Shown here: one piece after another, positions 8,556-59,430 of the stretch
Layout of the letters: the number at the start of each line of letters is the position of its first letter
Position numbering within the stretch: position 1 is the first letter of the stretch
Virus record (IMG/VR): IMGVR_UViG_3300050821_002957
Location: 341,632 to 405,631 of that record
Length of the DNA stretch: 64,000 nt
Direction: 5' to 3' (one strand)
Notes under the pieces: model-generated
Seen by the model: only the letters and a program-made list of their open reading frames with translations
Databases searched by the model: none
Told to the model about the DNA's origin: nothing
Program-made: the position numbers and the translations under genes

Positions 8556-8721
8556 GCTAAAGGCTTTGATGTACGTCTACCGAAAGGAATGGAAAGCCTG
8601 TCGGTTAAAAGTTAAGGCAACAAATCGGCAAATGGTTTTGCTGAAGCATAAGTTGAGAAAAGAAATGTTCAGACAGAAAAGAATTCAGAATAGAATGGAG
8701 AGAAGACAAAATGCCAGCTAA
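8548..8721 (+). CDS. Small basic hypothetical protein
   Basis: Overlaps both neighbours in the operon. Confidence 0.45.
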   Translation: MNELKALMYVYRKEWKACRLKVKATNRQMVLLKHKLRKEMFRQKRIQNRMERRQNAS

Positions 8722-10246
8722 CACAGCATGGAGAATGCAAAACGGACTTGATGGCTTCAAGTATCCTCGTGGTTCGAGTGAGCGCATGATGCCGAAGCGC
8801 ACGGACGGCTACAAACCTTCGCACTGGATGTTCGAGGAAGACGGCGTGACCGAGTGTTATGACTACCTCACCAGCCGTGGCGGTATGTTTCAAGACCTGA
8901 CGATGTTTGGAGCACAGTCCATCGTCATGAAGTACTTCTTGGGATGTGTCGTAACCCCGGAACAAGTTCGACGTGCTCGCAAATTTTATAAGAGTTATTA
9001 CGGCATGGACGGCGTGTTCAACTACGAAGCGTGGATGGACATTGCGACTCGTCTCGAAGGTCGCTTGCCTCTAGAATTCTGGGCGCTGCCTGAAGGCATG
9101 AGCGGCATTCCAGTTCAGACGCCGATGATGGCCTACGTCAACACCGATCCGAAGCACGCCCATCTGTCTGGCTACGTCGAGCCGCTGACGTTCAAGGTGT
9201 GGAATACAATCACCGTGGCGTCGTTGTCACAGCACATCAAGAAAATCATCTATCAGTTCCTCGTCGAGACCGGCACGCCCGAAGACATCATTTGGAAGCT
9301 GCATGACTTCGGTTACCGTGGTGTTTCGAGCGAAGAGTCCGCTGAATTTGCTGGGGCCGCACACCTTCTGAATTTCTGGGGCAGCGACACCATTCCGGCT
9401 ATCGATCACATCAACGAATTTTACTCGGATGGTGTGTTCGACGAAGATGGTGACCCTACCTACATGCCTGCCTTCAGCGTCCGTGCCACAGAGCACAGCA
9501 TCATGACGCAGAATGGCCGCAATGGTGAGTCGGCCATCGTTAAGCGTATCCTTCAAAAGTGCCCGAATGGGATCATCGCAATGGTCGGCGATAGCTACAA
9601 CATCTTCGACTTCTCCAGCAAGATCATCGGAACTGAATTCCACACCGAAGTGATCGAGCGTGAAGGTATTGTTGTGATTCGCCCGGACAGCGGTGAACCG
9701 ATTCCGACGATGATGAAAGTGATGTGGGAACTCGGCGAAAAATTCGGCAAGACGGTCAATGACAAGGGCTACTACAATCTCGGCACAGGCAAGGGTCTGG
9801 GCAAGATCAAGGTGCTTCAGGGCGACAAGAACGACTACGATGCTGTCTATAACATGCTCCGTGCCTTCAAGGGCGCTCAGTGGTCGGCGGATAACATTGC
9901 AGCCTTCGGCATGGGTGGCGCACTGTTGCAGGCCAGCACTCGTGATACTCAGAAGATGGCCGTCAAGCTCTCTTCGCAGACTCGTAATGGCGTCTGGGAA
10001 GATATCTTCAAAGATCCGATCACCGATCCTGGCAAGGGTTCCAAGTATGGTCGCTTCGCTGTGACATACGAAGAGAATGCTGGTGTACGTCGTATGGTGA
10101 CCAGTCGTCTGACTCAGAATGGTTCGATTCCGAATGGCAATCTGATGCGGATGATTTCTCGCAACGGTTACCTCGCCGTCCATGACAAATTTGAAACGGC
10201 TCGTGCTCGTGCGGATGAGTGGATGCCGAAATCCAAAGCAGCTTAA
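8711..10246 (+). CDS. nadV: Nicotinamide phosphoribosyltransferase
   Basis: TDGYKPSH, LHDFGYRG, ATEHS, DSY, IRPDSG, FGMGGALLQ, RDT, KDPITDPGKGSK. Confidence 0.95.
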   Translation: MPANTAWRMQNGLDGFKYPRGSSERMMPKRTDGYKPSHWMFEEDGVTECYDYLTSRGGMFQDLTMFGAQSIVMKYFLGCVVTPEQVRRARKFYKSYYGMDGVFNYEAWMDIATRLEGRLPLEFWALPEGMSGIPVQTPMMAYVNTDPKHAHLSGYVEPLTFKVWNTITVASLSQHIKKIIYQFLVETGTPEDIIWKLHDFGYRGVSSEESAEFAGAAHLLNFWGSDTIPAIDHINEFYSDGVFDEDGDPTYMPAFSVRATEHSIMTQNGRNGESAIVKRILQKCPNGIIAMVGDSYNIFDFSSKIIGTEFHTEVIEREGIVVIRPDSGEPIPTMMKVMWELGEKFGKTVNDKGYYNLGTGKGLGKIKVLQGDKNDYDAVYNMLRAFKGAQWSADNIAAFGMGGALLQASTRDTQKMAVKLSSQTRNGVWEDIFKDPITDPGKGSKYGRFAVTYEENAGVRRMVTSRLTQNGSIPNGNLMRMISRNGYLAVHDKFETARARADEWMPKSKAA

Positions 10247-10255
10247 GGAAAACCA

Positions 10256-11455
10256 ATGAGCCATTTTACTGTAATGGTTGCGGGAGAAGATGTCGATGTC
10301 CTTCTCGCACCCTACCATGAATTTGAATGTACTGGGGAAGATAATCAGTACGTCCAAGACATCGACCAGACCGAAGAAGCTCGACAAGAATACGCCGACC
10401 ACAAAGAAACGGTTGTTCGTCATCTGGCTTCTGGTAAGTTGGTCAAGAAGTTTACGAAAGAAGGCGAATACAAAAAGATGTTCGTCCGTGAACCTACACC
10501 AGAAGAATTGGCTCAAATTGGACGCTTTGGTGGCAGCGGCTCCTTGAGCAATGGCCTCAGTTATTATTCAAAAGATTGGGGTGATGGGTTAGGTTATCGT
10601 GCAAAGATCATCATCGTTCCCGAAGGCTACGAAGAAGTCGAAGTGCCTTGTTCTGAAGTGATGACGTTCGCCGAATTTATCGAGTATTGGTACGGGCGCA
10701 AGACGGTGCCTGAAGGCCGGGAACCAAATTTGAAGCGGCAACACAAGTACGGCTATGCGGTCGTAAATGAAGATGGTGAGGTCATTAAAGTCATTGACCG
10801 CACCAATCCCAACAAGAAGTGGGACGGCTATCAAATCGGTGGACGCTGGAACGGTTTCTTCAAGCTGAAGGAAAACAAAATTGGCATCATCGGTGAACCC
10901 GGCTTGCAGTCAATCAGCGAAAACTATAAACCACCTGCTTCAAATCGAGCCGACATCGCACGTAAAGGTGACATTGATTTCGACGGAATGAAATTTGAAT
11001 CAGCGACACGAGCAGCACAGAAGTACGATCTGTTTACGTCGATCACCAAAGCTCTTCCGTTGGCGCTTACATGGCCCTTGATGTTGGAAAAACACAAGAC
11101 CGGCGTCGATGCCAAGGGTGAACCTACATACAACTACAGTGTGGCCCGAGACGAATACGGTGCCCAACCGATGGTTCAGGCGCTTCGTAATCACAAAGAC
11201 GACGATGTTCGCTGGTGGGATTTGGAAGATTTCATGATGACTCGTCAAGAGTACATCGACCTCAGCGCAAAACAATCTATCATGACTTACGCCCTTGTCA
11301 TCGGTGACCAGTGGATTGCTCGTGGACGCATGGGTTGGTTCGGCGTCTCCCTCGACGAGAAAGACGAATACAAAGTTTGGGTAGATCGCTTTCACGAAGC
11401 TCTAAACGCATTGCCCGACGATACGCTGTTGACAATTGTGGATTGTCACATATGA
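10256..11455 (+). CDS. Conserved phage hypothetical protein (MSHFTV...DCHI family), long paralog
   Basis: NPNKKWDGYQIGGRW, GRMGWFG, terminal VDCHI. Confidence 0.7.
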   Translation: MSHFTVMVAGEDVDVLLAPYHEFECTGEDNQYVQDIDQTEEARQEYADHKETVVRHLASGKLVKKFTKEGEYKKMFVREPTPEELAQIGRFGGSGSLSNGLSYYSKDWGDGLGYRAKIIIVPEGYEEVEVPCSEVMTFAEFIEYWYGRKTVPEGREPNLKRQHKYGYAVVNEDGEVIKVIDRTNPNKKWDGYQIGGRWNGFFKLKENKIGIIGEPGLQSISENYKPPASNRADIARKGDIDFDGMKFESATRAAQKYDLFTSITKALPLALTWPLMLEKHKTGVDAKGEPTYNYSVARDEYGAQPMVQALRNHKDDDVRWWDLEDFMMTRQEYIDLSAKQSIMTYALVIGDQWIARGRMGWFGVSLDEKDEYKVWVDRFHEALNALPDDTLLTIVDCHI

Positions 11456-23508: not shown

Positions 23509-24786
23509 ATGGCAAAGAAAGATAAGAAAGGAGCAAAAAAATCAGAAGGTAGTTTTTTTGACGACTTACTCAAGAAAGTAGGACTGGATATTCCGGTCGC
23601 TACAGAAGTCAATGACATTCACAAAACGACCTTTTTCAGCACTGGATCGTTGATGTTGAATGCACTGGTCTCAAGCTCGATGAATGGTGGTCTGGCAGGC
23701 AATAAGATCACCGCTCTGGCAGGCGAGGAAGCAACCGGAAAGACATTCATCGCCTTGCAGTGCATCAAACACTTCTTGGACGAACAACCCACCGGCCACG
23801 TTTTCATTTTCGATTCAGAAGATGATCCGTCGAAGACTGAAGCTGTGATGAAAAAGCGTGGCATCGATACAAGCCGTGTCCACGTAAAGTTCGTCAAGAC
23901 TATTCAGGAATTCCGTCAACTGATGATCAACATCATTGATGGTTACCTGGAACAGCCGGTCGAAAAGCGCCAGCCGATGTTCATGGTGCTGGATTCGCTT
24001 GGAAACCTTTCGACCCTCAAGGAACTTCATGATACAGCGAAGGGTGCCTTGAACAAGAAGGGCGAAGATGTCAGGGATATGACTCGTACATCTTTGATTC
24101 GTGGTTTGTTCCGTGTGTTGACGATCAAGTTGGGCGAGGCGAATGTTCCGTTGCTCATCACCAATCACACCTATCAGACGATGAATCCGTATGGCGCTGC
24201 AACTACGATGAGTGGCGGCGGCGGTCTTCGGTACGCAGCTTCGACGATCATTTATTTGACCAAGAAGAAATTGCGTGATGCAGACAAGGACGTGATTGGA
24301 TCGATTCTGACGGCAACCCTCGACAAGAGCCGTTTCACTCCTCCAGGATTGAAAGCAGACCTACTCCTGACGCACGCAGCCGGTCTAGACAAATATTGGG
24401 GCCTGTTTGAATTTGGCCTTGAGACCGGAATCCTCATTAAGGGAACAGGTGTCGCAGAGAAAAACGACAAGTCTGGCAAAAAGAATGGAATCAAGGCGAA
24501 TAGCTACAAGTTCCCTGATGGTCAGATTGCCGACCGAAAGGAAATCGAAGCGAACCCATCCATGTACTTCGACACCGACATTAACTTTGCGGCGTTTGAA
24601 GAGCAGTGTGCCAAGACGTTCCAATTCGGTGAAGGTCAGGATCGTCCGATTAGTGATGAAGACGAGGCAGACGGTGAGATCGATATCGATGCAGCCGTCG
24701 CAGCAATGCAGGAAGCCTTTGAAGCAGTGGACGAAGCTGGCGATGCCGAAGTCGAAGAGCAGCCAAAAAAGAAAGGAAAGAAATAG
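23509..24786 (+). CDS. uvsX: RecA-like recombinase
   Basis: STGSLMLNAL, GEEATGKT, LDSLGNL, TNHTY, GGGGLRYAAS. Confidence 0.93.
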   Translation: MAKKDKKGAKKSEGSFFDDLLKKVGLDIPVATEVNDIHKTTFFSTGSLMLNALVSSSMNGGLAGNKITALAGEEATGKTFIALQCIKHFLDEQPTGHVFIFDSEDDPSKTEAVMKKRGIDTSRVHVKFVKTIQEFRQLMINIIDGYLEQPVEKRQPMFMVLDSLGNLSTLKELHDTAKGALNKKGEDVRDMTRTSLIRGLFRVLTIKLGEANVPLLITNHTYQTMNPYGAATTMSGGGGLRYAASTIIYLTKKKLRDADKDVIGSILTATLDKSRFTPPGLKADLLLTHAAGLDKYWGLFEFGLETGILIKGTGVAEKNDKSGKKNGIKANSYKFPDGQIADRKEIEANPSMYFDTDINFAAFEEQCAKTFQFGEGQDRPISDEDEADGEIDIDAAVAAMQEAFEAVDEAGDAEVEEQPKKKGKK

Positions 24787-24834
24787 TTGATGTAAGTCGG
24801 GAGGTTCTTTTAGGAGCCTCCCTCAAGAGAAAGA

Positions 24835-25518
24835 ATGGAACAAGCAAAATTAACGAATGACCAGTCTATTGAAATTGGACAGACCGATGAAGCACAGCAG
24901 ATACGAACACTCAGAGCTAACGGTTTTGTGATTGAATCCGCAACCAAATCGGAAGATATAAACGAGAAGATCGACTGTTTTTTGGTTTTGAAAAATGGCA
25001 CACGAGAGGCCATTCAAATCAAGGGCAGAGATAGGAATCCAGACAAGGCAAACATTTATGTCGATCTCCTATCCGATGTCTACGAACCTTATTGTGGTTT
25101 GGGACATCCTGATACCAAAATAGGCCGTGATGAATTCAGTGCTTACAAATGGTACACCTGCCGCATCAAGGAAGAAATGGTCTTAGTAAGCGGCGCTGCT
25201 CACAAAGATATCATTAAAACTGTCTTGGCTGAATGGGAAGAATCAGAAAACCGTAAGCAGATTGACAGACGATTGAGTGAATGGGTCACAACACTTCATC
25301 GAGTTGGAAACAAGGTTGATTGGGAACCAAATTTTGAATTGTTCAGAGAATTCCGGCAGTGGACTTTTGAAAGTGAGTCTTATCCGGGAGTGCAAATCAA
25401 ATGTACCCAAGATAAGCGTCGAACCGGCTGGCAGAAAAACAGGCCGAAGTTATTAGTCTTCGTTCCAATTTCTTCGTTCCAGCCAAAACATGTCAGAAGG
25501 TTCAAACTAAATGGATAG
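24835..25518 (+). CDS. PD-(D/E)XK-like nuclease-fold protein
   Basis: EDINEKIDCF...IQIKGR. Confidence 0.5.
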   Translation: MEQAKLTNDQSIEIGQTDEAQQIRTLRANGFVIESATKSEDINEKIDCFLVLKNGTREAIQIKGRDRNPDKANIYVDLLSDVYEPYCGLGHPDTKIGRDEFSAYKWYTCRIKEEMVLVSGAAHKDIIKTVLAEWEESENRKQIDRRLSEWVTTLHRVGNKVDWEPNFELFREFRQWTFESESYPGVQIKCTQDKRRTGWQKNRPKLLVFVPISSFQPKHVRRFKLNG

Positions 25519-28956: not shown

Positions 28957-29005
28957 CAACATACGGTATTTCTGGCGAAGTCTAAATACTTGCTCAGAGA
29001 ACCAT

Positions 29006-29285: not shown

Positions 29286-32200
29286 ATGTCACTTTGGAAT
29301 AATCAAACCCCTCCGGTTCTGTACCCGGATGCTGTAGCAACGAACGCAGGTTGGGCACATCCCGTAACTGGTGAATTGCTCGTCTGTGTCACAGGTCTGT
29401 CCACATATAAGAATGAAGGCGCAGGCACACAGCTTGTCAATGCTCGAATCTTGGGCGCAAAAGCTCAGGGCGCAGATCCTATCGTCCACAAGAAAATCTT
29501 TGCTGCTGGCGACGTAATTGTTGTCGAAGCAATTTTCTTGGAGCCTGTCACAAAGACTGGCGGCACACCGACGATGGCAATCAACATCAACGGTAACTCT
29601 CGGACCTTTACCCAATTCACTGATCCGACCAATTTTGATGCAAAAACCAAGGACAAAGTAACTGGTTTCACGATCAGTGCTGGTGGTTCTGGATACTTGG
29701 TCGGTGATAAATTGACCTTCACTGGCGGTGGTGGTTCGAGCGCAGAAGCAGTTGTAGCAACAGTTTCAAGCGGCGCAATCACAGGCATCACATTGCTTGC
29801 TGGTGGTTCTGGATACACTTCGGCTCCGACAGTCGGCGGCGGAACTGGAACGGGAGCAACTATCGTAGCAAAACTCGGTTCACTTGCAAACGGCCCTGGA
29901 ACGAATCGTTGGCTCTTCGGATATACAGTTGCATCTAACGAAACCGCAACCTCGGCACAGATTATTTTCCCATCTAGCATCACTGGTGTCTTCGATACCA
30001 CTGAGGATGCTCTTGGAGCTTCGGCAGCAGGCACAGCCGTTATTGGAACTGGAGTAACTTCCGTAACAGTAAGCGCTGGTGGTTCTGGTTATACATCGGC
30101 ACCGAAAGTTAGCTTTACTGGCGGCACTCCAACGACACCAGCAACAGCAGTAGCAGTTCTTGATCAAAGTGTTGGTTCTATCGCAGTTACCGCAGGTGGT
30201 TCTGGATACACCAGCGCACCCACGGTTACCTTTACAGGTGGCGGTGGATCTAGCTCAGTCGCAACAGCAGTTCTTGCATCGAGTGGTTCAATCAAATCGA
30301 TCACGATCACAAACGGTGGTACAGGCGGAACAAACGGCACTGGTGTAGCAGTTTCGATCACTGGTGGCGGCGGCACTGGAGCAACAGCAACAGCAACAAT
30401 CGCAGGCGGTGTTGTCACAGTGATCACCATAACTGCTGGTGGTTCTGGATACACTTCGGCACCTACTGTCTCGGTAACGGGTCAGGCTGGCTCGCCGGTT
30501 TATGCTCCAGTCATTGGCAAGGTAGTCGCATCAGTCACAGTTGGCACCCCAGGAAGCGGATACACTTCGGCTCCGACCATTGGTTTCACTGGTGGTTCTG
30601 GAAGCGGCGCAACAGCAACGGCTACAATGGCAACATTGACTGATGTACTTGCTGTAACTGTCACGAACCCTGGTGTAGGCTATACGGGCACACCAACCGT
30701 TTCGTTCACTCCTCAGGGCGGTGGCGCAGCAGCAACAATCTCGGTACTTGGTGGAACTGAAGGTTCTGGCAATGTAACCGGCGTAACCATCACAAATGGT
30801 GGAACACTTTATACTACAGCCCCTTCAGTCACTACGACAAGCGGTGGTTCTGGTGTCACCTTCACAGCAGTTTTGACGGGTGGTGTTGTAACCAGCGTAA
30901 CTTTCAGTGGAACTGGTACTGGATACACAAACGGTGACGCTTTGATCTTCACTGGTGGTTTGGCAGGTAGTGGCGCAACGGCAACGGCAACGACCGCAGG
31001 CGCAGTTGAATCGGTCACTATCACAAACGGTGGCTCTGGATACTGGAATGTTCCTACAGTCGCCTTCAGTGGTGGCTCTGGAACTGGTGCAGCAGGCACC
31101 GCAGTAGTCAGCCACGGCAAAGTAACAAGTGTGACGATGACCAACCCAGGAACAGGTTATACTGGTGCTCCTACGGTTGCATTCACAGAGCCATCATCGG
31201 CAGTGACCAATCCAACTTTCAACGGAACACCTTCCGCAGCCGGATACACTGTAAATGGTGTCGCACCGACAATCACAGCAGCAGCAATCTCTGGTTACCA
31301 AACCGGAACAACCTTCGTTACAAACAACATTGTGACCTTGACTCTTACGACAAGCGTCCCGGTTTACGTAACTGGTTCTCCGTACATCACGCTTGAAATC
31401 AATAGCAACCCAGAAACGGCTTCGTATGTAAATGGCAGCGGTACAACTACTTTGATCTTCCAGTACGAAGTTCAAGCAAGTGACTTCTGCACGGCAACGG
31501 AATTTACCATCACTTCCCCAGTTGTTCTCAACAGTGGAACGATGACAGACTTCCAGGGCAATGCTTTGGTCTTGACCTTTACGGCACCTACTGTCACGGC
31601 AGTTGTTGTCAACAGTCCGCTGGTTCCTAGCTTCACAGCAGCAGCGGTAACTGGTGGTCCTGCATACACGACATCCGGCACGGTGACGATCACTTTGACG
31701 GCGAATGTCAACGCAACAGTAGTAACGACAAACGGTACGCCTTATATCGAATTGTACATCGGAAGCAGTGTCCAGCACGCTACCTATGCTTCTGGTACAG
31801 GCACAACGAGCTTGGTCTTCACTTATACAGTGGGTTCGGGCGACGTAGCTACACCAAGAGCATTCTCGATTGGTTCACAAATCTTCTTGGCAGGCGGCAC
31901 GATTCAAAATGCTTCGGCAGTCAACTTCCCAGCATTCTTTACGGCACCTGACACTTCGGAAGATACGGTCAATTCTGGTTCGATTGCAGCATGGGCAAGC
32001 TCGGCTATGAGTGGTTTCAACTCTGGCACTGCTTACATCACTGGAAACAACATCACATTGACGCTTACAGCAAGCGAAAATGCAACCGTCAGCACAGCAA
32101 ACGGTACGCCTTATATCGAATTGTACATCGGAAACGCAACACGTTTTGCAATCTACACTTCAGGTTCGGGAACAACAGCCTTGGTATTCAAGTACACGGC

Positions 32201-32345
32201 TCTTTCGACCGACTCGGCAGTAGCAAAGACCTTCTCTACCGGAGACCAGATCCTATTCAATGGCGGCTCTATCGTAGACGGTTCTTCAAATCACTTCCCT
32301 GAGGACTTCATCGTCCCAGCAACATCAACCATCACTGTCAACTAA
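29286..32345 (+). CDS. Large Gly/Thr-rich repeat virion (fibre/decoration) protein
   Basis: MSLWN start; many (T/S)xGGSGYTSAPTV repeats; C-terminal Ig-like repeats with GSGTTxLxFxY. Confidence 0.75.
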   Translation: MSLWNNQTPPVLYPDAVATNAGWAHPVTGELLVCVTGLSTYKNEGAGTQLVNARILGAKAQGADPIVHKKIFAAGDVIVVEAIFLEPVTKTGGTPTMAININGNSRTFTQFTDPTNFDAKTKDKVTGFTISAGGSGYLVGDKLTFTGGGGSSAEAVVATVSSGAITGITLLAGGSGYTSAPTVGGGTGTGATIVAKLGSLANGPGTNRWLFGYTVASNETATSAQIIFPSSITGVFDTTEDALGASAAGTAVIGTGVTSVTVSAGGSGYTSAPKVSFTGGTPTTPATAVAVLDQSVGSIAVTAGGSGYTSAPTVTFTGGGGSSSVATAVLASSGSIKSITITNGGTGGTNGTGVAVSITGGGGTGATATATIAGGVVTVITITAGGSGYTSAPTVSVTGQAGSPVYAPVIGKVVASVTVGTPGSGYTSAPTIGFTGGSGSGATATATMATLTDVLAVTVTNPGVGYTGTPTVSFTPQGGGAAATISVLGGTEGSGNVTGVTITNGGTLYTTAPSVTTTSGGSGVTFTAVLTGGVVTSVTFSGTGTGYTNGDALIFTGGLAGSGATATATTAGAVESVTITNGGSGYWNVPTVAFSGGSGTGAAGTAVVSHGKVTSVTMTNPGTGYTGAPTVAFTEPSSAVTNPTFNGTPSAAGYTVNGVAPTITAAAISGYQTGTTFVTNNIVTLTLTTSVPVYVTGSPYITLEINSNPETASYVNGSGTTTLIFQYEVQASDFCTATEFTITSPVVLNSGTMTDFQGNALVLTFTAPTVTAVVVNSPLVPSFTAAAVTGGPAYTTSGTVTITLTANVNATVVTTNGTPYIELYIGSSVQHATYASGTGTTSLVFTYTVGSGDVATPRAFSIGSQIFLAGGTIQNASAVNFPAFFTAPDTSEDTVNSGSIAAWASSAMSGFNSGTAYITGNNITLTLTASENATVSTANGTPYIELYIGNATRFAIYTSGSGTTALVFKYTALSTDSAVAKTFSTGDQILFNGGSIVDGSSNHFPEDFIVPATSTITVN
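31729..32133 (+). repeat. 36-bp exact direct repeat between duplicated Ig-like domains
   Basis: CAAACGGTACGCCTTATATCGAATTGTACATCGGAA at 31729-31764 and 32098-32133. Confidence 0.8.
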
Positions 32346-43494: not shown

Positions 43495-43508
43495 CCCTAA
43501 ATAGGGGC

Positions 43509-44072
43509 ATGAAGAAGCAAGCAGTTCAGTGGGTAGTGGGTGTTGATTATTCTATGTCATGCCCTGCAATTACTATTTTCAATACAGACCAAGAATTCAA
43601 TTTTGGAAACTGTGTTATCCACTACCTCTCAGAAAAAGTTCCGAACAACAGTCTCCCAAATGTTCACGGCACTCGGCTCAGTGAATACACCAACAATGAG
43701 CAGCGATTTGATTTGATTTCTGAATGGGCCGTTGGTTGTATTCCTCGATCAGCAACAATTTTTATTGAAGACTATTCGTTCGGGTCCAAAGGTAAGACGT
43801 TTCATATTGCTGAAAATGCTGGACTCGTAAAGCACAAGCTGTGGCGTCTCGGCCATTCCATCCACCCCATCCCACCAACCGTCATCAAGAAATTCGCTAC
43901 AGGCAAGGGAAACGCCGACAAAACCTTGATGCATCAGTCCTTCGTCATCGAGACCGGATTTGACTTGATGACAATTTACCAACCTAAATCAATGAACGTC
44001 GGAAGTCCAGCCGGTGACATTGTAGACAGTTACTATATTTGCAAATATGGAGTGGAGAAAGCCGGGGATTGA
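43509..44072 (+). CDS. RuvC-like Holliday junction resolvase
   Basis: GVDYSMSCPA, IEDYS, AENAG, PTVIKKFATGKGNADK, DIVDSY. Confidence 0.85.
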   Translation: MKKQAVQWVVGVDYSMSCPAITIFNTDQEFNFGNCVIHYLSEKVPNNSLPNVHGTRLSEYTNNEQRFDLISEWAVGCIPRSATIFIEDYSFGSKGKTFHIAENAGLVKHKLWRLGHSIHPIPPTVIKKFATGKGNADKTLMHQSFVIETGFDLMTIYQPKSMNVGSPAGDIVDSYYICKYGVEKAGD

Positions 44073-48241: not shown

Positions 48242-48289
48242 GATAAAAAATCTTTCAGGAAGGGCCATTTCAGACTACTAAATACTACT

Positions 48290-48970
48290 ATGACACGAAC
48301 GATGATACGTGTCGTACTATTCTTGTCTTTATTGATTGGATTGTGCGACATTGCCACCGCTGGTGCTCGTAAAGATTATGAAGGTAGTGCAGAGTGTGAA
48401 CGATCCTTGGAGGGGATTAACTCAGAGCACTTTCTTGATGCAAACAGAATCTATTATGAGGCCGATACAGGCTTGGTTATTTTGGTTACCAGTGACACTA
48501 GCAAAGCCACTGACTACATCATCAGACCACGCATACTCGAACTTATCCCGGCGAAGATAGGCAACAAGCTAACATTCGCTGCTGGGACCGACCCACGAAT
48601 AGAACAGGTTCGCCAGTTCTTAGAGAAACACAGATCGCCAGCCGCTAAGTACGCAGAGCTTTTCATTCAGGTTGCAGATGACAATGACCTGGATTGGAAG
48701 TTGCTGCCCATGTTGTCTTTCATTGAAACAGGCGGCGGCAGATACAAAAACAACAACAACATTTTCGGTTGGGACTCAGGTAGAAAGAAGTTCCACTCCG
48801 TCGAAGAAGGCATCCGATACGTCGGTCATGCTTTGCAAAGTGGTCCGTATAGAAACAAAACCTTGCTGCAAAAACTCAAGGTCTATAATACGTACAAACA
48901 CTATACAGGCGTGGCTTTACGAGTGATGAAACAGATTGAAAATACACCTGTAACTTTTCCTTCAGCTTGA
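48290..48970 (+). CDS. Signal-peptide-bearing lysozyme/glucosaminidase-like protein
   Basis: DWKLLPMLSFIETGGG, NNIFGW, YN; late motif upstream. Confidence 0.65.
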   Translation: MTRTMIRVVLFLSLLIGLCDIATAGARKDYEGSAECERSLEGINSEHFLDANRIYYEADTGLVILVTSDTSKATDYIIRPRILELIPAKIGNKLTFAAGTDPRIEQVRQFLEKHRSPAAKYAELFIQVADDNDLDWKLLPMLSFIETGGGRYKNNNNIFGWDSGRKKFHSVEEGIRYVGHALQSGPYRNKTLLQKLKVYNTYKHYTGVALRVMKQIENTPVTFPSA

Positions 48971-53540: not shown

Positions 53541-54209
53541 ATGGGTAAGCGTACACACGAGTTTTATATTAGTATCGACATCGAAGCGAACGGGCCGTGT
53601 CCTGGCGTGCATTCGATGTTGCAATTTGGAGCAGTCTTCTACGACCCGAACGGTGTGGTGCTGGAAGAGTATTGCGCCAATATTCACGAGATCGAAGGCG
53701 GCATCGAAGATCCTGACACAATGAAATGGTGGGCCGAACAGGAAGTTAAAAATCCTGGTCTCTGGGCGTCCATGCGAGAGAATTTGGTCACGCCGAAATA
53801 TGCAATGGCTATGTTTGACAGCTTAGTCAGGAAGTACATGGTGGTTTTAAATTGTGCTCCACTGGTAGTCGCATACCCGGCTGGCTACGATTTCACTTGG
53901 CTCTATTACTATCTCTGCAAGTACATGGGAAAATCGGTCGTCGGTTTCTCGGCGCTGGACATGAAGACGATGGCAATGACGATCATCCAGAAGCGCTTCC
54001 ACGATTCGTCAAAGGCACGGTTTCCACGCTCCTGGTTCGATCCCAAATTGAAACACACTCACAATGCCCTGGACGATGCACGAGGCCAAGGGTACACGTT
54101 CTTTCAAATGAAACAGGCATTGGAAGACATTTGGGAAGTGCTCGGCCAAAGTGGAAACGAATGGGCCAATACCAAATACGCCAAAGTCCACAGTGACAAA
54201 AGTGAATAG
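53541..54209 (+). CDS. DEDDh 3'-5' exonuclease (second paralog)
   Basis: SIDIEANGP, AGYDF, HTHNALDDA. Confidence 0.85.
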   Translation: MGKRTHEFYISIDIEANGPCPGVHSMLQFGAVFYDPNGVVLEEYCANIHEIEGGIEDPDTMKWWAEQEVKNPGLWASMRENLVTPKYAMAMFDSLVRKYMVVLNCAPLVVAYPAGYDFTWLYYYLCKYMGKSVVGFSALDMKTMAMTIIQKRFHDSSKARFPRSWFDPKLKHTHNALDDARGQGYTFFQMKQALEDIWEVLGQSGNEWANTKYAKVHSDKSE

Positions 54210-54401: not shown

Positions 54402-54497
54402 AGCAATTGGATATCACAATAGTTCCTTTACACTCAGTAGTTTGCAGTGGGTTTCGTGGTCCCTCTAAATACTCCCTCAAAGAGTGCGGAGGGGCCA

Positions 54498-54968
54498 ATG
54501 ATTCTGGAACAATTAAAAGTTCGAGTTAAAGGAAAAGTTGTAAAGGCTTTCAAAAAGGCCGCAAAAGAAGCATTTCCCAAAGAAACTCTTGCGTACATGC
54601 TCGGCACCATTCGTGGTAAGAATTTGACCATCGAAAGCCTTTATTTCCCACCAGATGTCGATGAGCATTGCACTGCCAAAGCAGTTTTTGTCCAAAAAAG
54701 TTGGGTGAAGGCAGCAAAAAAAGAAGCAAAAACTATGGGCCTGGAAGTGGTCGGCGACATCCATAGTCATCCTTACGAATGGTCGGCGCTCAAATCCATC
54801 AAAACTGGTTGTCCTCTCCCGGATGCAGCACCATCGGAAAGCGATTGGGATTCTGAATCGGTCGGTCTTGTCGGTATTTGTCTGGTCAAAGAGCAAAAAG
54901 GCGGCAAGAAAATTGCAAGAGTCAAATTTTTCGCTCCTATGCTTCCGCAAGTCGCAGTAATCGAATAG
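54498..54968 (+). CDS. JAB/MPN+ (JAMM) metalloprotease
   Basis: PKET..YMLG, GDIHSHP...PSESD; GGAGG RBS; late motif upstream. Confidence 0.8.
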   Translation: MILEQLKVRVKGKVVKAFKKAAKEAFPKETLAYMLGTIRGKNLTIESLYFPPDVDEHCTAKAVFVQKSWVKAAKKEAKTMGLEVVGDIHSHPYEWSALKSIKTGCPLPDAAPSESDWDSESVGLVGICLVKEQKGGKKIARVKFFAPMLPQVAVIE

Positions 54969-54986
54969 TTTGAGCTAAATACGTAC

Positions 54987-56363
54987 ATGGATATCAATCG
55001 CCTACCAGATCCGGCACCGCAGCAACCACTCCAGCCACTTCAATGGACTTGGATTGTACAGCGACACGAAACACCGGATGCGAAAGCCAATTCAATTTGG
55101 AAGTTTGGTTTTATCGCTCCTGATGGTGCAGAAGTACGAGTTACCTTCCATCAAGTTGGTGATAATGTAGAAGCTCTCGACCAACAAAAAGAACAGCAGA
55201 AACAGCAGGCCGCATCTTCCGCAGCAGCGATGGGAATGCCGCCGTCTTCGGACCCTACTGACTTTGCACCACCGGGCCAACCAAATACAGATGCAACTGA
55301 AGATGCAACATATTACGTAACATTCTTCTCAAATCGATCTCCAGAGTTTTTTATGAAGTGGGACACGAGCTTGTCACACGAAGATTCACTCATTACTTGG
55401 ATTACGATTACACACGGCATTATTGATTTCGTCCGTAAAGCAAAACCAGCGAATGTGATTTTAGACGATCTTTCAAATGGAAAAATGAAGATGGTCCTTC
55501 GTTCCGTCGCAATGGATGTCGCCGCATCGAATCCAGAATACCAGTTAGAACAGACACAAAAACATCATTATCGTAGTTTTTTTCAAATCAAAAAAGTTGG
55601 TGTTCAATCAGCATTTCAAAACACAGTCCAAGGAACAGGCCGGGAAGGTGAAACACAACAGCCTGGACAAAATCAGCAGCCACAAGCTACGCCGCAACCG
55701 GGCCAAGATGCACAGACGCCGCCAGGACAGCAACCACCAGAGCAAAGCAACGCATTCCAGTCTGGTGACGTTCATACGAAGCCACAGGACAGCGACAATG
55801 GTGTCTCTGCCGACAGCAGCCCTGCACCTGGAGATCAACCAGCATTTCCTTCACATGAACCTGTGCAGATCAAACAGACGCCGGTTCAGAAGAAAGGTCT
55901 GTCCGTAGAAATTGGAATGAATGACTATTCGGTCGCCATCAAGAATAAAGAAGGCGATGCGATTGATCGTTATCGTGCAAAGGGACCAGCCGACATTCTC
56001 CGTTGGATCAATGAAAAAGGCTACGGCTCGAATCCAATGAAAATCGTAGATCGTGAGATGCCTTCGTACACAATCAAACCGAAGATCATTCTCGCTCGAA
56101 CCCCGGCGACGGACTCGACAGTCAAGCCGGTCACTGGAAGTGCGCTCGGTGTGCAGGAAGAAATCGTTGTCGCCGGAAATTCAGTCCGAATAATGAAAAT
56201 CATTCCTGCAAAACAAGCAGCAATGATGAACTATCTCATAAATGCAACCGAAGTAAAATGCACAAACGAAGCGGTCGAATTCGTTTTTGAAACCGATAAG
56301 GACATGAACTTCAAACGTGCCATCGTCGAACTTGCTTACGCTCAGTTAAACCTTCGAGACTGA
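54987..56363 (+). CDS. Late Gln/Pro-rich hypothetical protein
   Basis: CTAAATA 5 nt upstream of the ATG; low-complexity linkers. Confidence 0.6.
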   Translation: MDINRLPDPAPQQPLQPLQWTWIVQRHETPDAKANSIWKFGFIAPDGAEVRVTFHQVGDNVEALDQQKEQQKQQAASSAAAMGMPPSSDPTDFAPPGQPNTDATEDATYYVTFFSNRSPEFFMKWDTSLSHEDSLITWITITHGIIDFVRKAKPANVILDDLSNGKMKMVLRSVAMDVAASNPEYQLEQTQKHHYRSFFQIKKVGVQSAFQNTVQGTGREGETQQPGQNQQPQATPQPGQDAQTPPGQQPPEQSNAFQSGDVHTKPQDSDNGVSADSSPAPGDQPAFPSHEPVQIKQTPVQKKGLSVEIGMNDYSVAIKNKEGDAIDRYRAKGPADILRWINEKGYGSNPMKIVDREMPSYTIKPKIILARTPATDSTVKPVTGSALGVQEEIVVAGNSVRIMKIIPAKQAAMMNYLINATEVKCTNEAVEFVFETDKDMNFKRAIVELAYAQLNLRD

Positions 56364-56585
56364 ACGAGAATATTCCTTCATAGCCACACTCACTTTTGCC
56401 AACGTCCAGTAAGATGATGGCTCATAGGAAAATTCCAAAACCAAAGTATGGTATCCGTGAACAGTTTGACTGATGGCGCATTCACGCCGTAGCTCTCCGA
56501 GGCTAAACGTGATCCATTCCCAACGTTCGTGCCATTGGTTGGCATCCATCGAAGTTCCAATCATTGAAACAAAAATGTCGATCAT
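56346..56585 (-). CDS. Hypothetical protein
   Basis: Follows the upstream minus-strand gene. Confidence 0.4.
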   Translation of the reverse strand: MIDIFVSMIGTSMDANQWHERWEWITFSLGELRRECAISQTVHGYHTLVLEFSYEPSSYWTLAKVSVAMKEYSRSVSKV

Positions 56586-56596
56586 AATTTTTCATT

Positions 56597-57055
56597 TCAT
56601 CGTGCTAATGGACACGGCGATTTGAACTTCAGAAACGCCTGCTCCCACGGAGTGTATAACGAAACCAAAGTTCTATCGGTTGTGGACCAGAGAACCTCAG
56701 GAGTTTGTAATACACGACCAGCAGTATTAGCTATGTCGTCGTACAGGCGCTCAGGGATGACGATGCCGATGCTCGATACCGCATAGTTCATACCCGGCTC
56801 ACGGAACAATGCACACGGATAGGGATTGTTCTCGTCCAAAAACAACGTCGCAAATGCATCCGACAAAGCCTTGTGATCACCGGCATGAAGGATGATGGTC
56901 GTCTTGTGGTTCCGAACGAAATCCACCATCGTAGCAAATTGAGCACTTGCCGTGTTTTTGGTCACGCTTGCCCAGATCTCATCCTTGGCGTGATCGGCCT
57001 GAATTCCATTGTGGATACCAGCCCAGTACATGTTGTTGAATGCGTAGAATCTCAT
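56597..57055 (-). CDS. PTH2 (peptidyl-tRNA hydrolase II)-like phage protein
   Basis: GIQADHA, KTTIILHAG, FREP. Confidence 0.5.
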   Translation of the reverse strand: MRFYAFNNMYWAGIHNGIQADHAKDEIWASVTKNTASAQFATMVDFVRNHKTTIILHAGDHKALSDAFATLFLDENNPYPCALFREPGMNYAVSSIGIVIPERLYDDIANTAGRVLQTPEVLWSTTDRTLVSLYTPWEQAFLKFKSPCPLAR

Positions 57056-57211
57056 GTCGAAAACCAGAATAACACACACCAGTTCTCAATGTCAAGATGC
57101 ATCTAATTGAAATGTGAATCAACCAGTAGATGGAACATGTGCTGGGTCATCCAATCGCTGAAGAAAATTTTCGATTCCAGACATACGCCAATAGTATGCT
57201 ATGATGGTGAC

Positions 57212-57793
57212 ATGAAGGTAATTCGGATCACCAGAGGCGTTCCTCGTTTCAACATTCAGATTGGGCCTGTCAGCCAAGCGCTCAATCACAACCCGACGTG
57301 TATTCTTTCGGTCACGGATTATTACGAAACGGCGATTGCTCAATTTCCAAATTACCACTGGATTCCTGTCAATGAAGTCTCCCAAAGCTGGGGCTACTTA
57401 CCGTTTTATGCAGCCAAACGAATTCTTGATTTTCATTGCCTGGATCTTGGTGAACCATTAATGTTCGTCGGATGCACGGCTGGAAAACATCGTTCTCCGA
57501 TGATGGCATTCTGCTGGTTAATGTCGTTGCCTTCAGCGGCATTAGATGGCCCACCAGAAAAATTTGGCGGCGCTTCCCCGGAAACTGTCGGCAAGGAATT
57601 TTATGGTTCGTTCAAAGATGGAATCGAAGACGGCAATCTCGTCAAAAAATATTATCAGGACGTAAAGCTCGGTTACATTCCTGATCGTCTACCAGAAATG
57701 TATCAACTTATGCGGCAATTACCATCGGCTTCGTACCGAGACATCATGCACAACATGTGCCTGTTGGAACGAATCACATACCCGGAAACTTAA
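57212..57793 (+). CDS. Cys-based (PTP/DSP-like) phosphatase
   Basis: CX5R motif VGCTAGKHRSP. Confidence 0.6.
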   Translation: MKVIRITRGVPRFNIQIGPVSQALNHNPTCILSVTDYYETAIAQFPNYHWIPVNEVSQSWGYLPFYAAKRILDFHCLDLGEPLMFVGCTAGKHRSPMMAFCWLMSLPSAALDGPPEKFGGASPETVGKEFYGSFKDGIEDGNLVKKYYQDVKLGYIPDRLPEMYQLMRQLPSASYRDIMHNMCLLERITYPET

Positions 57794-58755: not shown

Positions 58756-59430
58756 ATGGCAACTTTCAAAACAGATATTTGGAATCGTATGGGCCGGTAC
58801 AATAACATCGGCGACGACATCTCGACAAACGTCTTCAATCTGGTTATTACATTCACCGTGATGTTTGGGTTAGCCCTTTACGGTGTTCTGGCGGATACTT
58901 TCTCGACCACGAAATTCGGCTTCTGGACTTCGATCTTAATCCTGATTGGAACTTTTGGCGGCTGTTTTTTTGCAGCGATGGATTTTACACCTGCGAAACT
59001 CGTCGGATTGAGCTTGATCGCAGGTGGTCTCGGTACGCTATCGGGATCGTTTTATCACCAATTCACTAAAGGTTCCATTCTGAATGTCATCGTAATGGTC
59101 GCCGCTATTACAACGATATTAGGTGCAATCGGAACTCTTATCCCCCGAAGCCTTGCCAACTGGGGAAGTACATTGCTTACGCTTCTGACAGCATTAATCA
59201 TCGGTCAATTGGTGTGTGTTCTCTTTCTGCCTACGTATCAAGCACACACATTTCTGGACTGGTGTGGTGTTCTGCTCTTTAGTGCCTACATCGTCTTCGA
59301 TTTTAACCGTGCTCAATACGTCGAGAAGACAGTCGATAATGCTATGGACTGCGGCATCAGCATCTTCCTGGACATTGCCAATCTGCTTATCTACTTGATG
59401 GAACTCTTCGGACAAAAAGACAATGACTAG
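58756..59430 (+). CDS. Bax inhibitor-1/YccA family membrane protein
   Basis: About 7 TMs; LFSAYIVFDF, SIFLDIANL. Confidence 0.8.
   Translation: MATFKTDIWNRMGRYNNIGDDISTNVFNLVITFTVMFGLALYGVLADTFSTTKFGFWTSILILIGTFGGCFFAAMDFTPAKLVGLSLIAGGLGTLSGSFYHQFTKGSILNVIVMVAAITTILGAIGTLIPRSLANWGSTLLTLLTALIIGQLVCVLFLPTYQAHTFLDWCGVLLFSAYIVFDFNRAQYVEKTVDNAMDCGISIFLDIANLLIYLMELFGQKDND

What the first reader, a model, noticed from the sequence alone, without database searches (positions are those of the whole stretch)
54465..54968. Stand-alone late JAB/JAMM protease: candidate antagonist of ubiquitin-like defence
The E...HSH...S..D catalytic set is intact, and the gene has its own late motif and RBS. No E1/E2/Ubl gene or lambdoid tail-K context is present in the window. 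Known: Bil-type systems conjugate Ubls to virion proteins late in infection, CBASS Cap2 conjugates cyclases, and JAB enzymes reverse such linkages. Inference: a phage deconjugase that protects assembling virions.
Basis: inference. Interest (0 to 1): 0.68.

Follow-up and report, generated by a model that had tools for sequence, protein, structure and literature searches.

The report
Late stand-alone phage JAB metallopeptidase
A 405-kb T4-like soil phage carries a small zinc peptidase of the deubiquitinase (JAB/JAMM) type that looks active, sits behind the same late-promoter motif as the capsid genes and has no ubiquitin-like partner genes in the phage; it belongs to a previously unnamed, almost wholly phage-borne family that may undo host ubiquitin-like tagging, but its substrate is untested.

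Summary
ATG 54498 to stop 54968 encodes a 156-aa Prok-JAB protein. E29, H89-S90-H91, S113 and D116 are intact, and E29, H89, H91 and D116 are invariant in 80 relatives. A GGAGG lies 5 nt before the ATG, and CTAAATA lies at 54465-54471.

That heptamer also precedes the major head, scaffold, portal, sheath, terminase and baseplate genes of this 405-kb T4-like genome. It is conserved before the JAB gene in 8 of 8 relatives.

Pfam models for E1, E2, Ubl and NlpC/P60 found nothing over threshold anywhere in the genome.

The protein is not BilC, Cap3 or lambda tail protein K:
- BilC model: 31.8 bits over part of the model, against 197-221 bits for true BilC.
- Cap3-type model: at most 22.7 bits, against 104.
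- In a tree it falls in a separate clade of about 150-aa stand-alone JABs. That family has 232 clusters, nearly all on phage contigs, at varied positions.

One relative carries a SprT-like peptidase plus a GNAT in the same slot, so the gene looks accessory.

A counter-defence deconjugase is the best guess (about 0.35). Processing of a phage protein is the main rival. No experiment or substrate evidence exists.

The parts
54465..54471 (+). CTAAATA, a T4-type late-promoter-like motif 26 nt upstream of the JAB start codon
   Evidence: Enriched in the window and in the genome, where it is tied to gene starts. It precedes the head, portal, sheath, terminase and baseplate genes. It is conserved before the JAB gene in 8 of 8 relatives. 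Late timing itself is inferred from T4 biology, not measured.
54488..54492 (+). GGAGG Shine-Dalgarno sequence, 5 nt before the ATG
   Evidence: Read directly from the sequence. A GGAG-like element is kept at the same place in the relatives.
54498..54968 (+). JAB/JAMM zinc metallopeptidase gene, 156 aa (P0001), stand-alone single domain
   Evidence: Pfam Prok-JAB and JAB above their cut-offs. 232 representative relatives at E<=1e-3, nearly all 145-165 aa. AF2 pLDDT 95.7. JAMM fold at Z up to 15.1.
54582..54584 (+). Codon of E29, the general-base glutamate of the JAMM motif
   Evidence: Invariant in 80 relatives.
54762..54770 (+). Codons of H89-S90-H91 (HxH zinc ligands)
   Evidence: H89 and H91 are invariant and S90 is at least 90% conserved; read from the sequence.
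54834..54845 (+). Codons of S113-E-S-D116 (the S..D part of the JAMM motif; D116 is a zinc ligand)
   Evidence: D116 is invariant and S113 is at least 90% conserved.
54975..54981 (+). Second CTAAATA, 5 nt before the start of the next gene
   Evidence: Conserved at -12 to -17 in 8 of 8 relatives, including L043, which lacks the JAB gene.
54987..56363 (+). Conserved downstream neighbour ('c15'), 458 aa. It has two conserved globular parts joined by a Q/P-rich low-complexity linker and has no Pfam or PHROG match. Whether it is linked to the JAB is open.
   Evidence: It follows the JAB gene in 8 of 9 relatives. The complex prediction gave no answer.
57212..57793 (+). CX5R cysteine-phosphatase-like gene (dual-specificity phosphatase fold, weak match). 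It recurs a few genes downstream of the JAB gene in two unrelated phage lineages. Whether it belongs to the feature is open.
   Evidence: Pfam DSPc E 0.0029, below cut-off. CX5R motif present in clusters c24 and c2. The c24 HMM hits c2 at E 3e-4. hhalign probability is only 29%.

Best explanation
The gene encodes a catalytically competent-looking, stand-alone zinc JAMM/JAB (iso)peptidase. It belongs to a distinct family of about 150-aa proteins that is almost wholly phage-borne. In this 405-kb T4-like soil phage it sits behind a T4-type late motif.

Proposed mechanism (inferred): late in infection the enzyme binds the C-terminal tail of a ubiquitin-like or similarly tagged protein. It hydrolyses the (iso)peptide bond that links that tail to another protein, using Zn held by H89, H91 and D116, with E29 as general base. 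The phage encodes no detectable E1, E2 or Ubl. The likeliest substrates are therefore conjugates made by the host: Bil- or Bub-type Ubl attached to virion proteins, or Cap2-type CD-NTase conjugates. That would make it an accessory counter-defence deconjugase.

Shown here: the fold, the catalytic residues, the conserved late motif and RBS, the stand-alone status, the separate clade, and the variable, replaceable genomic position.

Inferred: enzymatic activity, substrate, timing and the counter-defence role.
For: The JAMM motif is intact and E29, H89, H91 and D116 are invariant in 80 relatives; Pfam scores are above cut-off.

The confident model has as its best structural matches only Ubl-specific JAMM enzymes: a Caldiarchaeum Rpn11 homologue bound to ubiquitin (Z 15.1), PfJAMM1 with SAMP2 (14.3), CSN5, BRCC36, BubCD (12.4) and Cap3 with a CD-NTase (12.4). 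Among defence-protein models, BilC is the best match for the window protein and for all six relatives scanned.

The late motif is shared with the structural genes and conserved in relatives.

No E1, E2, Ubl or NlpC/P60 was found in the whole genome.

The behaviour is that of an accessory gene. The family sits at many different positions in unrelated phages. Relative L043 keeps both flanking genes but has a SprT-like peptidase plus a GNAT in the JAB slot. The phage has its own gp21-type prohead protease.

Bil and Cap3-type systems exist, rarely, in Acidobacteriota, the phylum in which prophage-borne relatives were found.

The papers searched describe no phage countermeasure against Ubl-conjugating defences.
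Against: There is no direct evidence of activity, substrate or timing. RNA-library contigs do not cover the gene.

It is not a BilC or Cap3 family member, so specificity for their Ubls cannot be assumed.

The host, and any host Ubl defence, are unknown. Bil was found in only about 1% of the 301 Acidobacteriota genomes sampled.

One bacterial homologue lies in a chromosomal island next to a STAND NTPase rather than in a phage.

In this clade the gene is kept next to one late protein in 8 of 9 relatives, and elsewhere it lies beside head or tail genes. Both facts fit a phage-internal substrate equally well.
Confidence: 0.35

Rival explanations
1. It is a morphogenetic or processing peptidase with a phage-encoded substrate. 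It would cut a precursor or remove a domain from a late phage protein, as proposed for lambda tail protein K acting on protein I. Candidates are the conserved downstream two-domain protein (54987-56363) or a virion protein.
For: JAB and c15 are adjacent in 8 of 9 relatives, each with its own conserved late motif. c15 has two globular parts joined by a low-complexity linker, an architecture that recalls lambda/T1 TAPI as described in PMC1779556. In L013 the JAB gene lies between the portal and the scaffold/major head genes, the usual prohead-protease slot. In the Bryobacteraceae prophage L036 it follows a J-like tail protein and a tail sheath-like protein. In another phage it abuts an intein-bearing 929-aa gene (TerL-like by position) and the portal gene.
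Against: No fixed partner is seen across the family; the neighbours differ in each phage type. L043 keeps c15 but has no JAB at the slot. This phage, and L052, have classical prohead proteases. No Ubl or beta-grasp domain was detected. The adjacency within one clade may only reflect shared ancestry.
Confidence: 0.25
2. It is a host-takeover enzyme that acts on ordinary host proteins or carriers rather than on defence conjugates. One possibility is cleaving adducts or extensions of ThiS/MoaD/CysO-type sulfur carriers, as Mec+ and QbsD do. Another is cleaving a host regulator.
For: The closest solved sequences are two uncharacterised stand-alone bacterial JABs, 2kcq and 2kks (E 6.6e-11 and 1.1e-9). 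Weak NCBIfam matches to the desampylase model are seen in relatives. The window carries other host-physiology genes, namely NAMPT and Bax1-I.
Against: No sulfur-carrier or biosynthetic context was seen in any of the roughly 45 loci examined. A late motif is odd for a takeover function.
Confidence: 0.1
3. It is half of a two-enzyme late module with the CX5R phosphatase-like protein, acting on a substrate not yet considered, such as a doubly modified protein or a nucleotide-linked protein adduct.
For: A CX5R phosphatase-like gene lies 2-4 genes downstream of the JAB gene in both the T4-like clade (4 of 4 loci that reach that far) and an unrelated podovirus-like clade (17 loci). The two phosphatase groups are only distantly related.
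Against: The link between the two phosphatase groups is weak (hhalign probability 29%). Other JAB contexts have no such gene. The genes are never adjacent. The co-occurrence rests on only two lineages and may be chance.
Confidence: 0.08
4. It is an inactive or non-coding feature: a decayed JAB or a chance ORF.
For: None beyond the absence of expression data.
Against: The catalytic residues are invariant, 131 representatives match at E<=1e-10, the promoter motif and RBS are conserved, and the model is confident.
Confidence: 0.02

Closest known systems
BilC, the JAB deubiquitinase of the Bil (BilABCD) anti-phage system
   Same: Small stand-alone JAMM peptidase of about 160 aa. BilC is the best match among PADLOC defence models (31.8 bits, E 2.3e-8). 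Same fold (BilC chain 8tyx is matched by the family profile at E 0.017).
   Different: Only positions 33-103 of 168 are matched, whereas true BilC in Acidobacteriota scores 197-221 bits over the full length. It falls in a separate clade in the tree. No BilA, BilB or BilD-type genes are in the genome. It is encoded by a phage rather than by a host defence operon.
Cap3, the JAB isopeptidase of type II CBASS
   Same: Same fold (9ild, Z 12.4, 125 residues aligned) and similar size. Cap3 reverses Cap2-made CD-NTase conjugates (PMC10097602), which is the kind of reaction proposed here.
   Different: Cap3-type HMMs give at most 22.7 bits, against 104 bits for a real one. Cap3 was absent from the profile-versus-PDB hits at E<=0.1. 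It falls in a separate clade. No Cap2-like E1/E2 was found.
Lambda/T1 tail assembly protein K (TAPK: JAB plus NlpC/P60) with the Ubl protein I
   Same: A phage-encoded JAB domain expressed with late genes. Some family members lie next to tail or head genes.
   Different: There is no NlpC/P60 domain in the protein or anywhere in the genome. No TAPI-like Ubl was found. The phage is a T4-like myovirus, not a lambdoid siphovirus. No PHROG family for tail K is matched. Lambda K is unplaced in the tree because of a very long branch.
Archaeal JAMM1 / Rpn11-like desampylases and deubiquitinases (PfJAMM1, Caldiarchaeum Rpn11 homologue)
   Same: These are the best structural matches (Z 15.1 and 14.4, 116-132 residues aligned). 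They are minimal stand-alone JAMM domains of 130-150 aa that cut Ubl C-termini.
   Different: Sequence identity is 18-20% and the profile E-values are only 1e-5 to 6e-4. Those enzymes work with Ubl, E1 and E2 genes of their own organism, which are absent here.
Uncharacterised bacterial stand-alone Mov34/MPN proteins 2kcq and 2kks (structural genomics)
   Same: These are the closest solved sequences to the family profile (E 6.6e-11 and 1.1e-9). 2kks gives Z 13.5.
   Different: Only the N-terminal 90 residues align in sequence. Their functions are unknown, and they are bacterial rather than phage proteins.

Membership tests
JAB/JAMM (MPN+) metallopeptidase superfamily (Pfam PF14464 / PF01398) | E ... 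HxH ... S..D zinc-binding and catalytic motif | tested here: met
   E29, H89, H91, S113 and D116 are present. E29, H89, H91 and D116 are invariant in 80 relatives.
JAB/JAMM (MPN+) metallopeptidase superfamily (Pfam PF14464 / PF01398) | Profile score above the curated cut-off, and the MPN fold | tested here: met
   Prok-JAB 37.8 bits (cut-off 25) and JAB 28.1 bits (cut-off 22.5). Model pLDDT 95.7, matching JAMM structures at Z 12-15.
JAB/JAMM (MPN+) metallopeptidase superfamily (Pfam PF14464 / PF01398) | Zn-dependent (iso)peptidase activity | not testable with these tools
   Needs a biochemical assay.
BilC (Bil system deubiquitinase) | Full-length, high-scoring match to the BilC profile | tested here: not met
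   31.8 bits over profile positions 33-103 of 168. True BilC in Acidobacteriota scores 197-221 bits over positions 4-167.
BilC (Bil system deubiquitinase) | Encoded together with a Ubl (BilA), an E2 (BilB) and an E1 (BilD) | tested here: not met
   Nothing over threshold in the whole 405-kb genome for ThiF, Prok-E2_A, Prok-E2_B, UQ_con, ThiS, ubiquitin or Prok_Ub. Caveats: the UQ_con search rang in no control genome, and the Prok-E2 models rang in only one control each, below cut-off.
BilC (Bil system deubiquitinase) | Falls inside the BilC clade | tested here: not met
   The three BilC rows form their own group (SH-aLRT 93), away from the window's clade (SH-aLRT 89). This is a quick tree on 154 columns.
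Cap3 (type II CBASS isopeptidase) | High-scoring match to Cap3-type JAB profiles | tested here: not met
   Best score 22.7 bits (PDLC00898), against 104 bits for a genuine match.
Cap3 (type II CBASS isopeptidase) | Operon with Cap2 (E1-E2) and a CD-NTase | tested here: not met
   No E1 or E2 domain in the genome. A CD-NTase was not searched for separately.
Lambdoid tail assembly protein K (TAPK) | JAB fused to, or beside, an NlpC/P60 domain | tested here: not met
   The protein is a single 156-aa domain. There is no NLPC_P60 match in the genome.
Lambdoid tail assembly protein K (TAPK) | Flanked by the Ubl protein I and the central tail fibre J | tested here: not met
   The flanking genes are an Rv2179c-like exonuclease, a 59-aa membrane ORF and an unknown 458-aa protein. 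The phage is T4-like.
T4-type late gene | Late-promoter -10 motif (T4: TATAAATA; here the variant CTAAATA) close upstream | tested here: met
   The motif is at 54465-54471. The same motif precedes six identified structural or packaging genes and is conserved in relatives.
T4-type late gene | Transcribed late in infection | not testable with these tools
   The phage is uncultured. RNA-library contigs do not cover the gene.
Prohead maturation protease | It is the phage's only candidate head protease and lies in the head module | tested here: not met
   A gp21-type Peptidase_S77 (130 bits) lies in the head module at genome positions 24661-25110. The JAB gene is about 370 kb away, among DNA-metabolism genes.

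The most novel reading that the evidence does not exclude
This is the founding example of a widespread family of phage-encoded 'deubiquitinases'. They would be made late in infection and would strip host ubiquitin-like tags (Bil, Bub or Cap2-type conjugates) from virion or signalling proteins. That would be the first enzymatic phage countermeasure against bacterial ubiquitin-like immunity, mirroring the deconjugases of eukaryotic viruses.
Probability: 0.3. Interest if true: 0.8.

Novelty: new variant of a known kind. Interest (0 to 1): 0.52.

Why it matters
Bacterial ubiquitin-like conjugation systems (Bil, Bub, CBASS Cap2/Cap3) are recent discoveries. The papers searched here, including a November 2026 review of phage countermeasures, describe no phage enzyme that reverses them. 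This gene defines a compact family of 232 clusters at 50% identity, seen only in metagenomic phages and a few prophages or genomic islands. It is absent from PHROGs, NCBIfam and 50,697 deposited phage genomes. That gives a concrete, cheap set of candidates to test on Bil and type II CBASS hosts. If the rival explanation is right, it would instead be a new kind of JAMM-based maturation step in phage assembly. Either result would assign a function to a conserved late gene of large soil phages.

Tried and rejected
- Deposited phages: megablast of the locus and tblastn of the protein against 50,697 phage genomes gave no match.
- PHROGs gave only sub-threshold matches to families of unknown function. 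NCBIfam gave nothing for the window protein.
- The word-based protein search gave only 7 relatives. The exhaustive search was therefore used, because family membership and stand-alone status rest on relatives.
A 10-sequence alignment worked.
- Complex prediction of JAB with the downstream 458-aa protein returned 'no answer' (score 0.00, controls not run). This is not evidence either way.
- The ESM Atlas search on the 458-aa neighbour returned only low-scoring viral hypothetical proteins.
- Reads: the phage DNA occurs in at least two soil metagenome studies. The one metatranscriptome library holds contigs only over 53822-54118 and 56236-56386, so expression of the JAB gene is neither shown nor excluded.
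- The idea that JAB is the prohead protease was rejected for this phage, because gp21-type S77 is present.
- The idea that the window protein is a diverged BilC was rejected on score calibration and on the tree.
- No BilC was found in the four bacterial genomes that carry relatives. The only hits there, in three of them, were members of this same family.
- Longer relatives were scanned for informative fusions. The only one is a JAB plus Endonuclease VII protein on a 929-nt contig.
- No alternative genetic code was needed or used.

Full report
**The sequence**

The window is the last 64 kb of a 405,631-bp virus record that CheckV rates as 100% complete. The phage is T4-like. It has a gp43-type DNA polymerase, a UvsX-like recombinase, a gp41-type helicase, RNase H and ribonucleotide reductase. 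Elsewhere in the genome it has a T4-type major head protein, scaffold, portal, sheath, large terminase, baseplate wedge and gp21-type prohead protease. The DNA is found in soil metagenomes from at least two studies.

The gene in question runs from ATG 54498 to the stop at 54966-54968 and encodes 156 aa. GGAGG lies 5 nt before the ATG. The finding's start coordinate, 54465, is the first base of CTAAATA rather than of the gene.

**The protein**

- Pfam places it in Prok-JAB (37.8 bits) and JAB (28.1 bits), both above their cut-offs.
- An exhaustive profile search found 232 cluster representatives at E<=1e-3 and 131 at E<=1e-10. Nearly all are 145-165 aa, so these are single-domain, stand-alone proteins.
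- In an 80-sequence alignment E29, H89, H91 and D116 are invariant. S90 and S113 are nearly so. Family-specific positions such as P27, G36, P51 and W69, and a C-terminal RFWGP-like motif, are also conserved.
- The AlphaFold model is confident (pLDDT 95.7).
- Its best structural matches are all JAMM enzymes that cut at the C-terminus of ubiquitin-like proteins: a Caldiarchaeum Rpn11 homologue bound to ubiquitin (Z 15.1), PfJAMM1 (14.4), CSN5, BRCC36, Rpn11, BubCD (12.4) and Cap3 bound to a CD-NTase (12.4).

The observation of an intact catalytic set is therefore confirmed. An (iso)peptidase activity is a sound inference, though untested.

**The late motif**

- CTAAATA occurs 10 times in the window against 3.6 expected, and 79 times in the genome.
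- 48 of those 79 copies lie within 60 nt upstream of a called ATG. Other A/T-rich control 7-8-mers gave 0-25 near starts, the highest being the overlapping word TAAATAC; TCAAATA, for example, has 75 copies with only 2 near starts.
- Genes preceded by the motif include the major head protein, scaffold, portal, sheath, terminase and baseplate wedge.
- In eight related phages the motif is kept at -24 to -33 before the JAB start, followed by a GGAG-like RBS (7 CTAAATA, 1 ATAAATA). It is kept again at -12 to -17 before the next gene.

This is good evidence for a functional T4-type late promoter element. The timing itself is inferred from T4 biology. RNA-library contigs do not cover the gene.

**Stand-alone status**

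Whole-genome scans found one Prok-JAB. Nothing passed threshold for ThiF, Prok-E2_A, Prok-E2_B, UQ_con, ThiS, ubiquitin, Prok_Ub or NLPC_P60. Two caveats apply. The UQ_con search rang in no control genome, and the Prok-E2 models in only one control each below cut-off, so those blanks say little. Beta-grasp domains are also easily missed by sequence models.

**Family membership**

| Test | Window protein | Genuine member |
|---|---|---|
| PADLOC BilC model | 31.8 bits, positions 33-103 of 168 | 197-221 bits, full length, in Acidobacteriota |
| Cap3-type models | at most 22.7 bits | 104 bits |

- The family profile is closest to two uncharacterised bacterial JABs, 2kcq and 2kks. BilC and BubCD come far behind, and Cap3 is not listed.
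- In a quick maximum-likelihood tree (65 rows, 154 columns) the window protein sits in a group of 33 family rows (SH-aLRT 89).
- In that tree BilC (93) and Cap3 (95) each form their own group. They join other bacterial JABs and a podovirus-borne JAB group on a different branch (84).
- Lambda K has a very long branch and cannot be placed.

The protein is therefore not a member of BilC, Cap3 or TAPK. It represents a separate subfamily that is not in PHROGs or NCBIfam and is absent from 50,697 deposited phage genomes.

**Genomic contexts**

- In the T4-like clade (the window plus eight relatives) the gene order is RNase H, DUF6433, Rv2179c-like exonuclease, JAB, a 450-600-aa unknown protein, and a few genes later a CX5R phosphatase-like gene and a Bax1-I homologue.
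- One relative (L048) has a GIY-YIG homing endonuclease between JAB and its neighbour.
- Another relative (L043) keeps both flanking genes but has a SprT-like HExxH protein plus a GNAT acetyltransferase in place of the JAB.
- In a podovirus-like clade (17 loci) a more distant JAB lies between tail-fibre-like genes and the terminase. A CX5R phosphatase-like gene again lies a few genes downstream.
- Elsewhere the JAB lies:
  - between portal and scaffold/major head genes (L013);
  - before an intein-bearing 929-aa gene (TerL-like by position) and the portal gene;
  - after a J-like tail protein in a Bryobacteraceae prophage;
  - after an Erf recombinase or nucleotide-metabolism genes;
  - before HNH, TerS and TerL in a prophage with its own S78 protease;
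  - in one bacterial island, beside a PNP-STAND-TPR protein.

The family is thus overwhelmingly phage-borne, mobile in position and replaceable. That is typical of accessory genes.

**Interpretation**

All characterised active JAMM enzymes cut peptide or isopeptide bonds at the C-terminal tail of a small tag protein. That statement rests on general knowledge of the family, on PMC1779556 and on PMC10097602. The phage makes no detectable tag or conjugation enzymes. The substrate is therefore either a host-made conjugate or a phage precursor that was not recognised here.

The reasons are the accessory behaviour, the late motif and the absence of any fixed phage partner across the family. The second (about 0.25) is kept alive by the conserved neighbour and by the head- and tail-adjacent positions. 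The single complex prediction on JAB plus neighbour gave no answer.

The papers searched report no phage-encoded enzyme against Bil, Bub or Cap2-type conjugation. If confirmed, the function would be new.

Noticed in passing
Whole genome G000; in the window for example 54975-54989, 43497-43511 and 48278-48292: In 16 of the 48 motif-associated genes, CTAAATA ends exactly 5 nt before the ATG, and 26 of 48 have a gap of 5-9 nt. If transcription starts where it does at T4 late promoters, many late mRNAs of this phage would be leaderless or nearly so. The JAB gene, by contrast, has a 26-nt gap containing an SD sequence.
   Followed up: partly
window 57212-57793; group-B loci, for example L022:9229-9804: A CX5R cysteine-phosphatase-like gene lies 2-4 genes downstream of the JAB gene in both the T4-like clade and an unrelated podovirus-like clade. 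The two phosphatase groups are only weakly related (HMM E 3e-4; hhalign probability 29%).
   Followed up: partly
window 54987-56363: A conserved late protein of unknown function. It has two globular parts and a Q/P-rich low-complexity linker, and is 49-58% identical in eight relatives. It has no Pfam or PHROG match. Some relatives carry extra C-terminal or internal segments.
   Followed up: partly
L043:3020-3990: In one relative the JAB slot is filled by a SprT-like HExxH protein (22.8 bits, just under the cut-off) and a GNAT acetyltransferase. This may be a functional swap of one metallopeptidase for another.
   Followed up: partly
L048:3210-4089: A GIY-YIG/NUMOD3 homing endonuclease, apparently split into two ORFs, is inserted between the JAB gene and its neighbour in a 166-kb relative.
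   Followed up: no
window 56346-57079 (minus strand): The homologue of a plus-strand gene of relative L001 (38% identity) lies on the minus strand here. This indicates a small local inversion just downstream of the 458-aa gene.
   Followed up: partly
window 58756-59430: A phage-encoded Bax1-I (BAX inhibitor-1 / YccA-like) membrane protein, conserved in relative L001.
   Followed up: no
window 8711-11455: A nicotinamide phosphoribosyltransferase gene, followed by a phrog_10079 protein of unknown function. This may be an NAD+ salvage pair of the kind linked to counter-defence.
   Followed up: no
L013:4081-8630: In this phage the family's JAB lies between the portal gene and the scaffold/major head genes, the slot usually held by a prohead protease.
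   Followed up: partly
L004:2994-7036 and L005: A bacterial chromosomal homologue (43% identical) lies divergently beside an 870-aa PNP_UDP_1 / AAA_16 / TPR STAND-type protein, and before an 81-aa ORF plus an HTH_3 gene. This is a defence-island-like setting.
   Followed up: no
P0144 (274 aa, on a 929-nt contig): A single relative is a fusion of JAB and Endonuclease VII. It may be a real fusion or a gene-calling or assembly artefact.
   Followed up: no
window 29286-32345: A 1019-aa protein with repeated virion-structural or baseplate-like domains lies among the replication genes. A CTAAATA lies about 300 nt upstream, at 28982.
   Followed up: no
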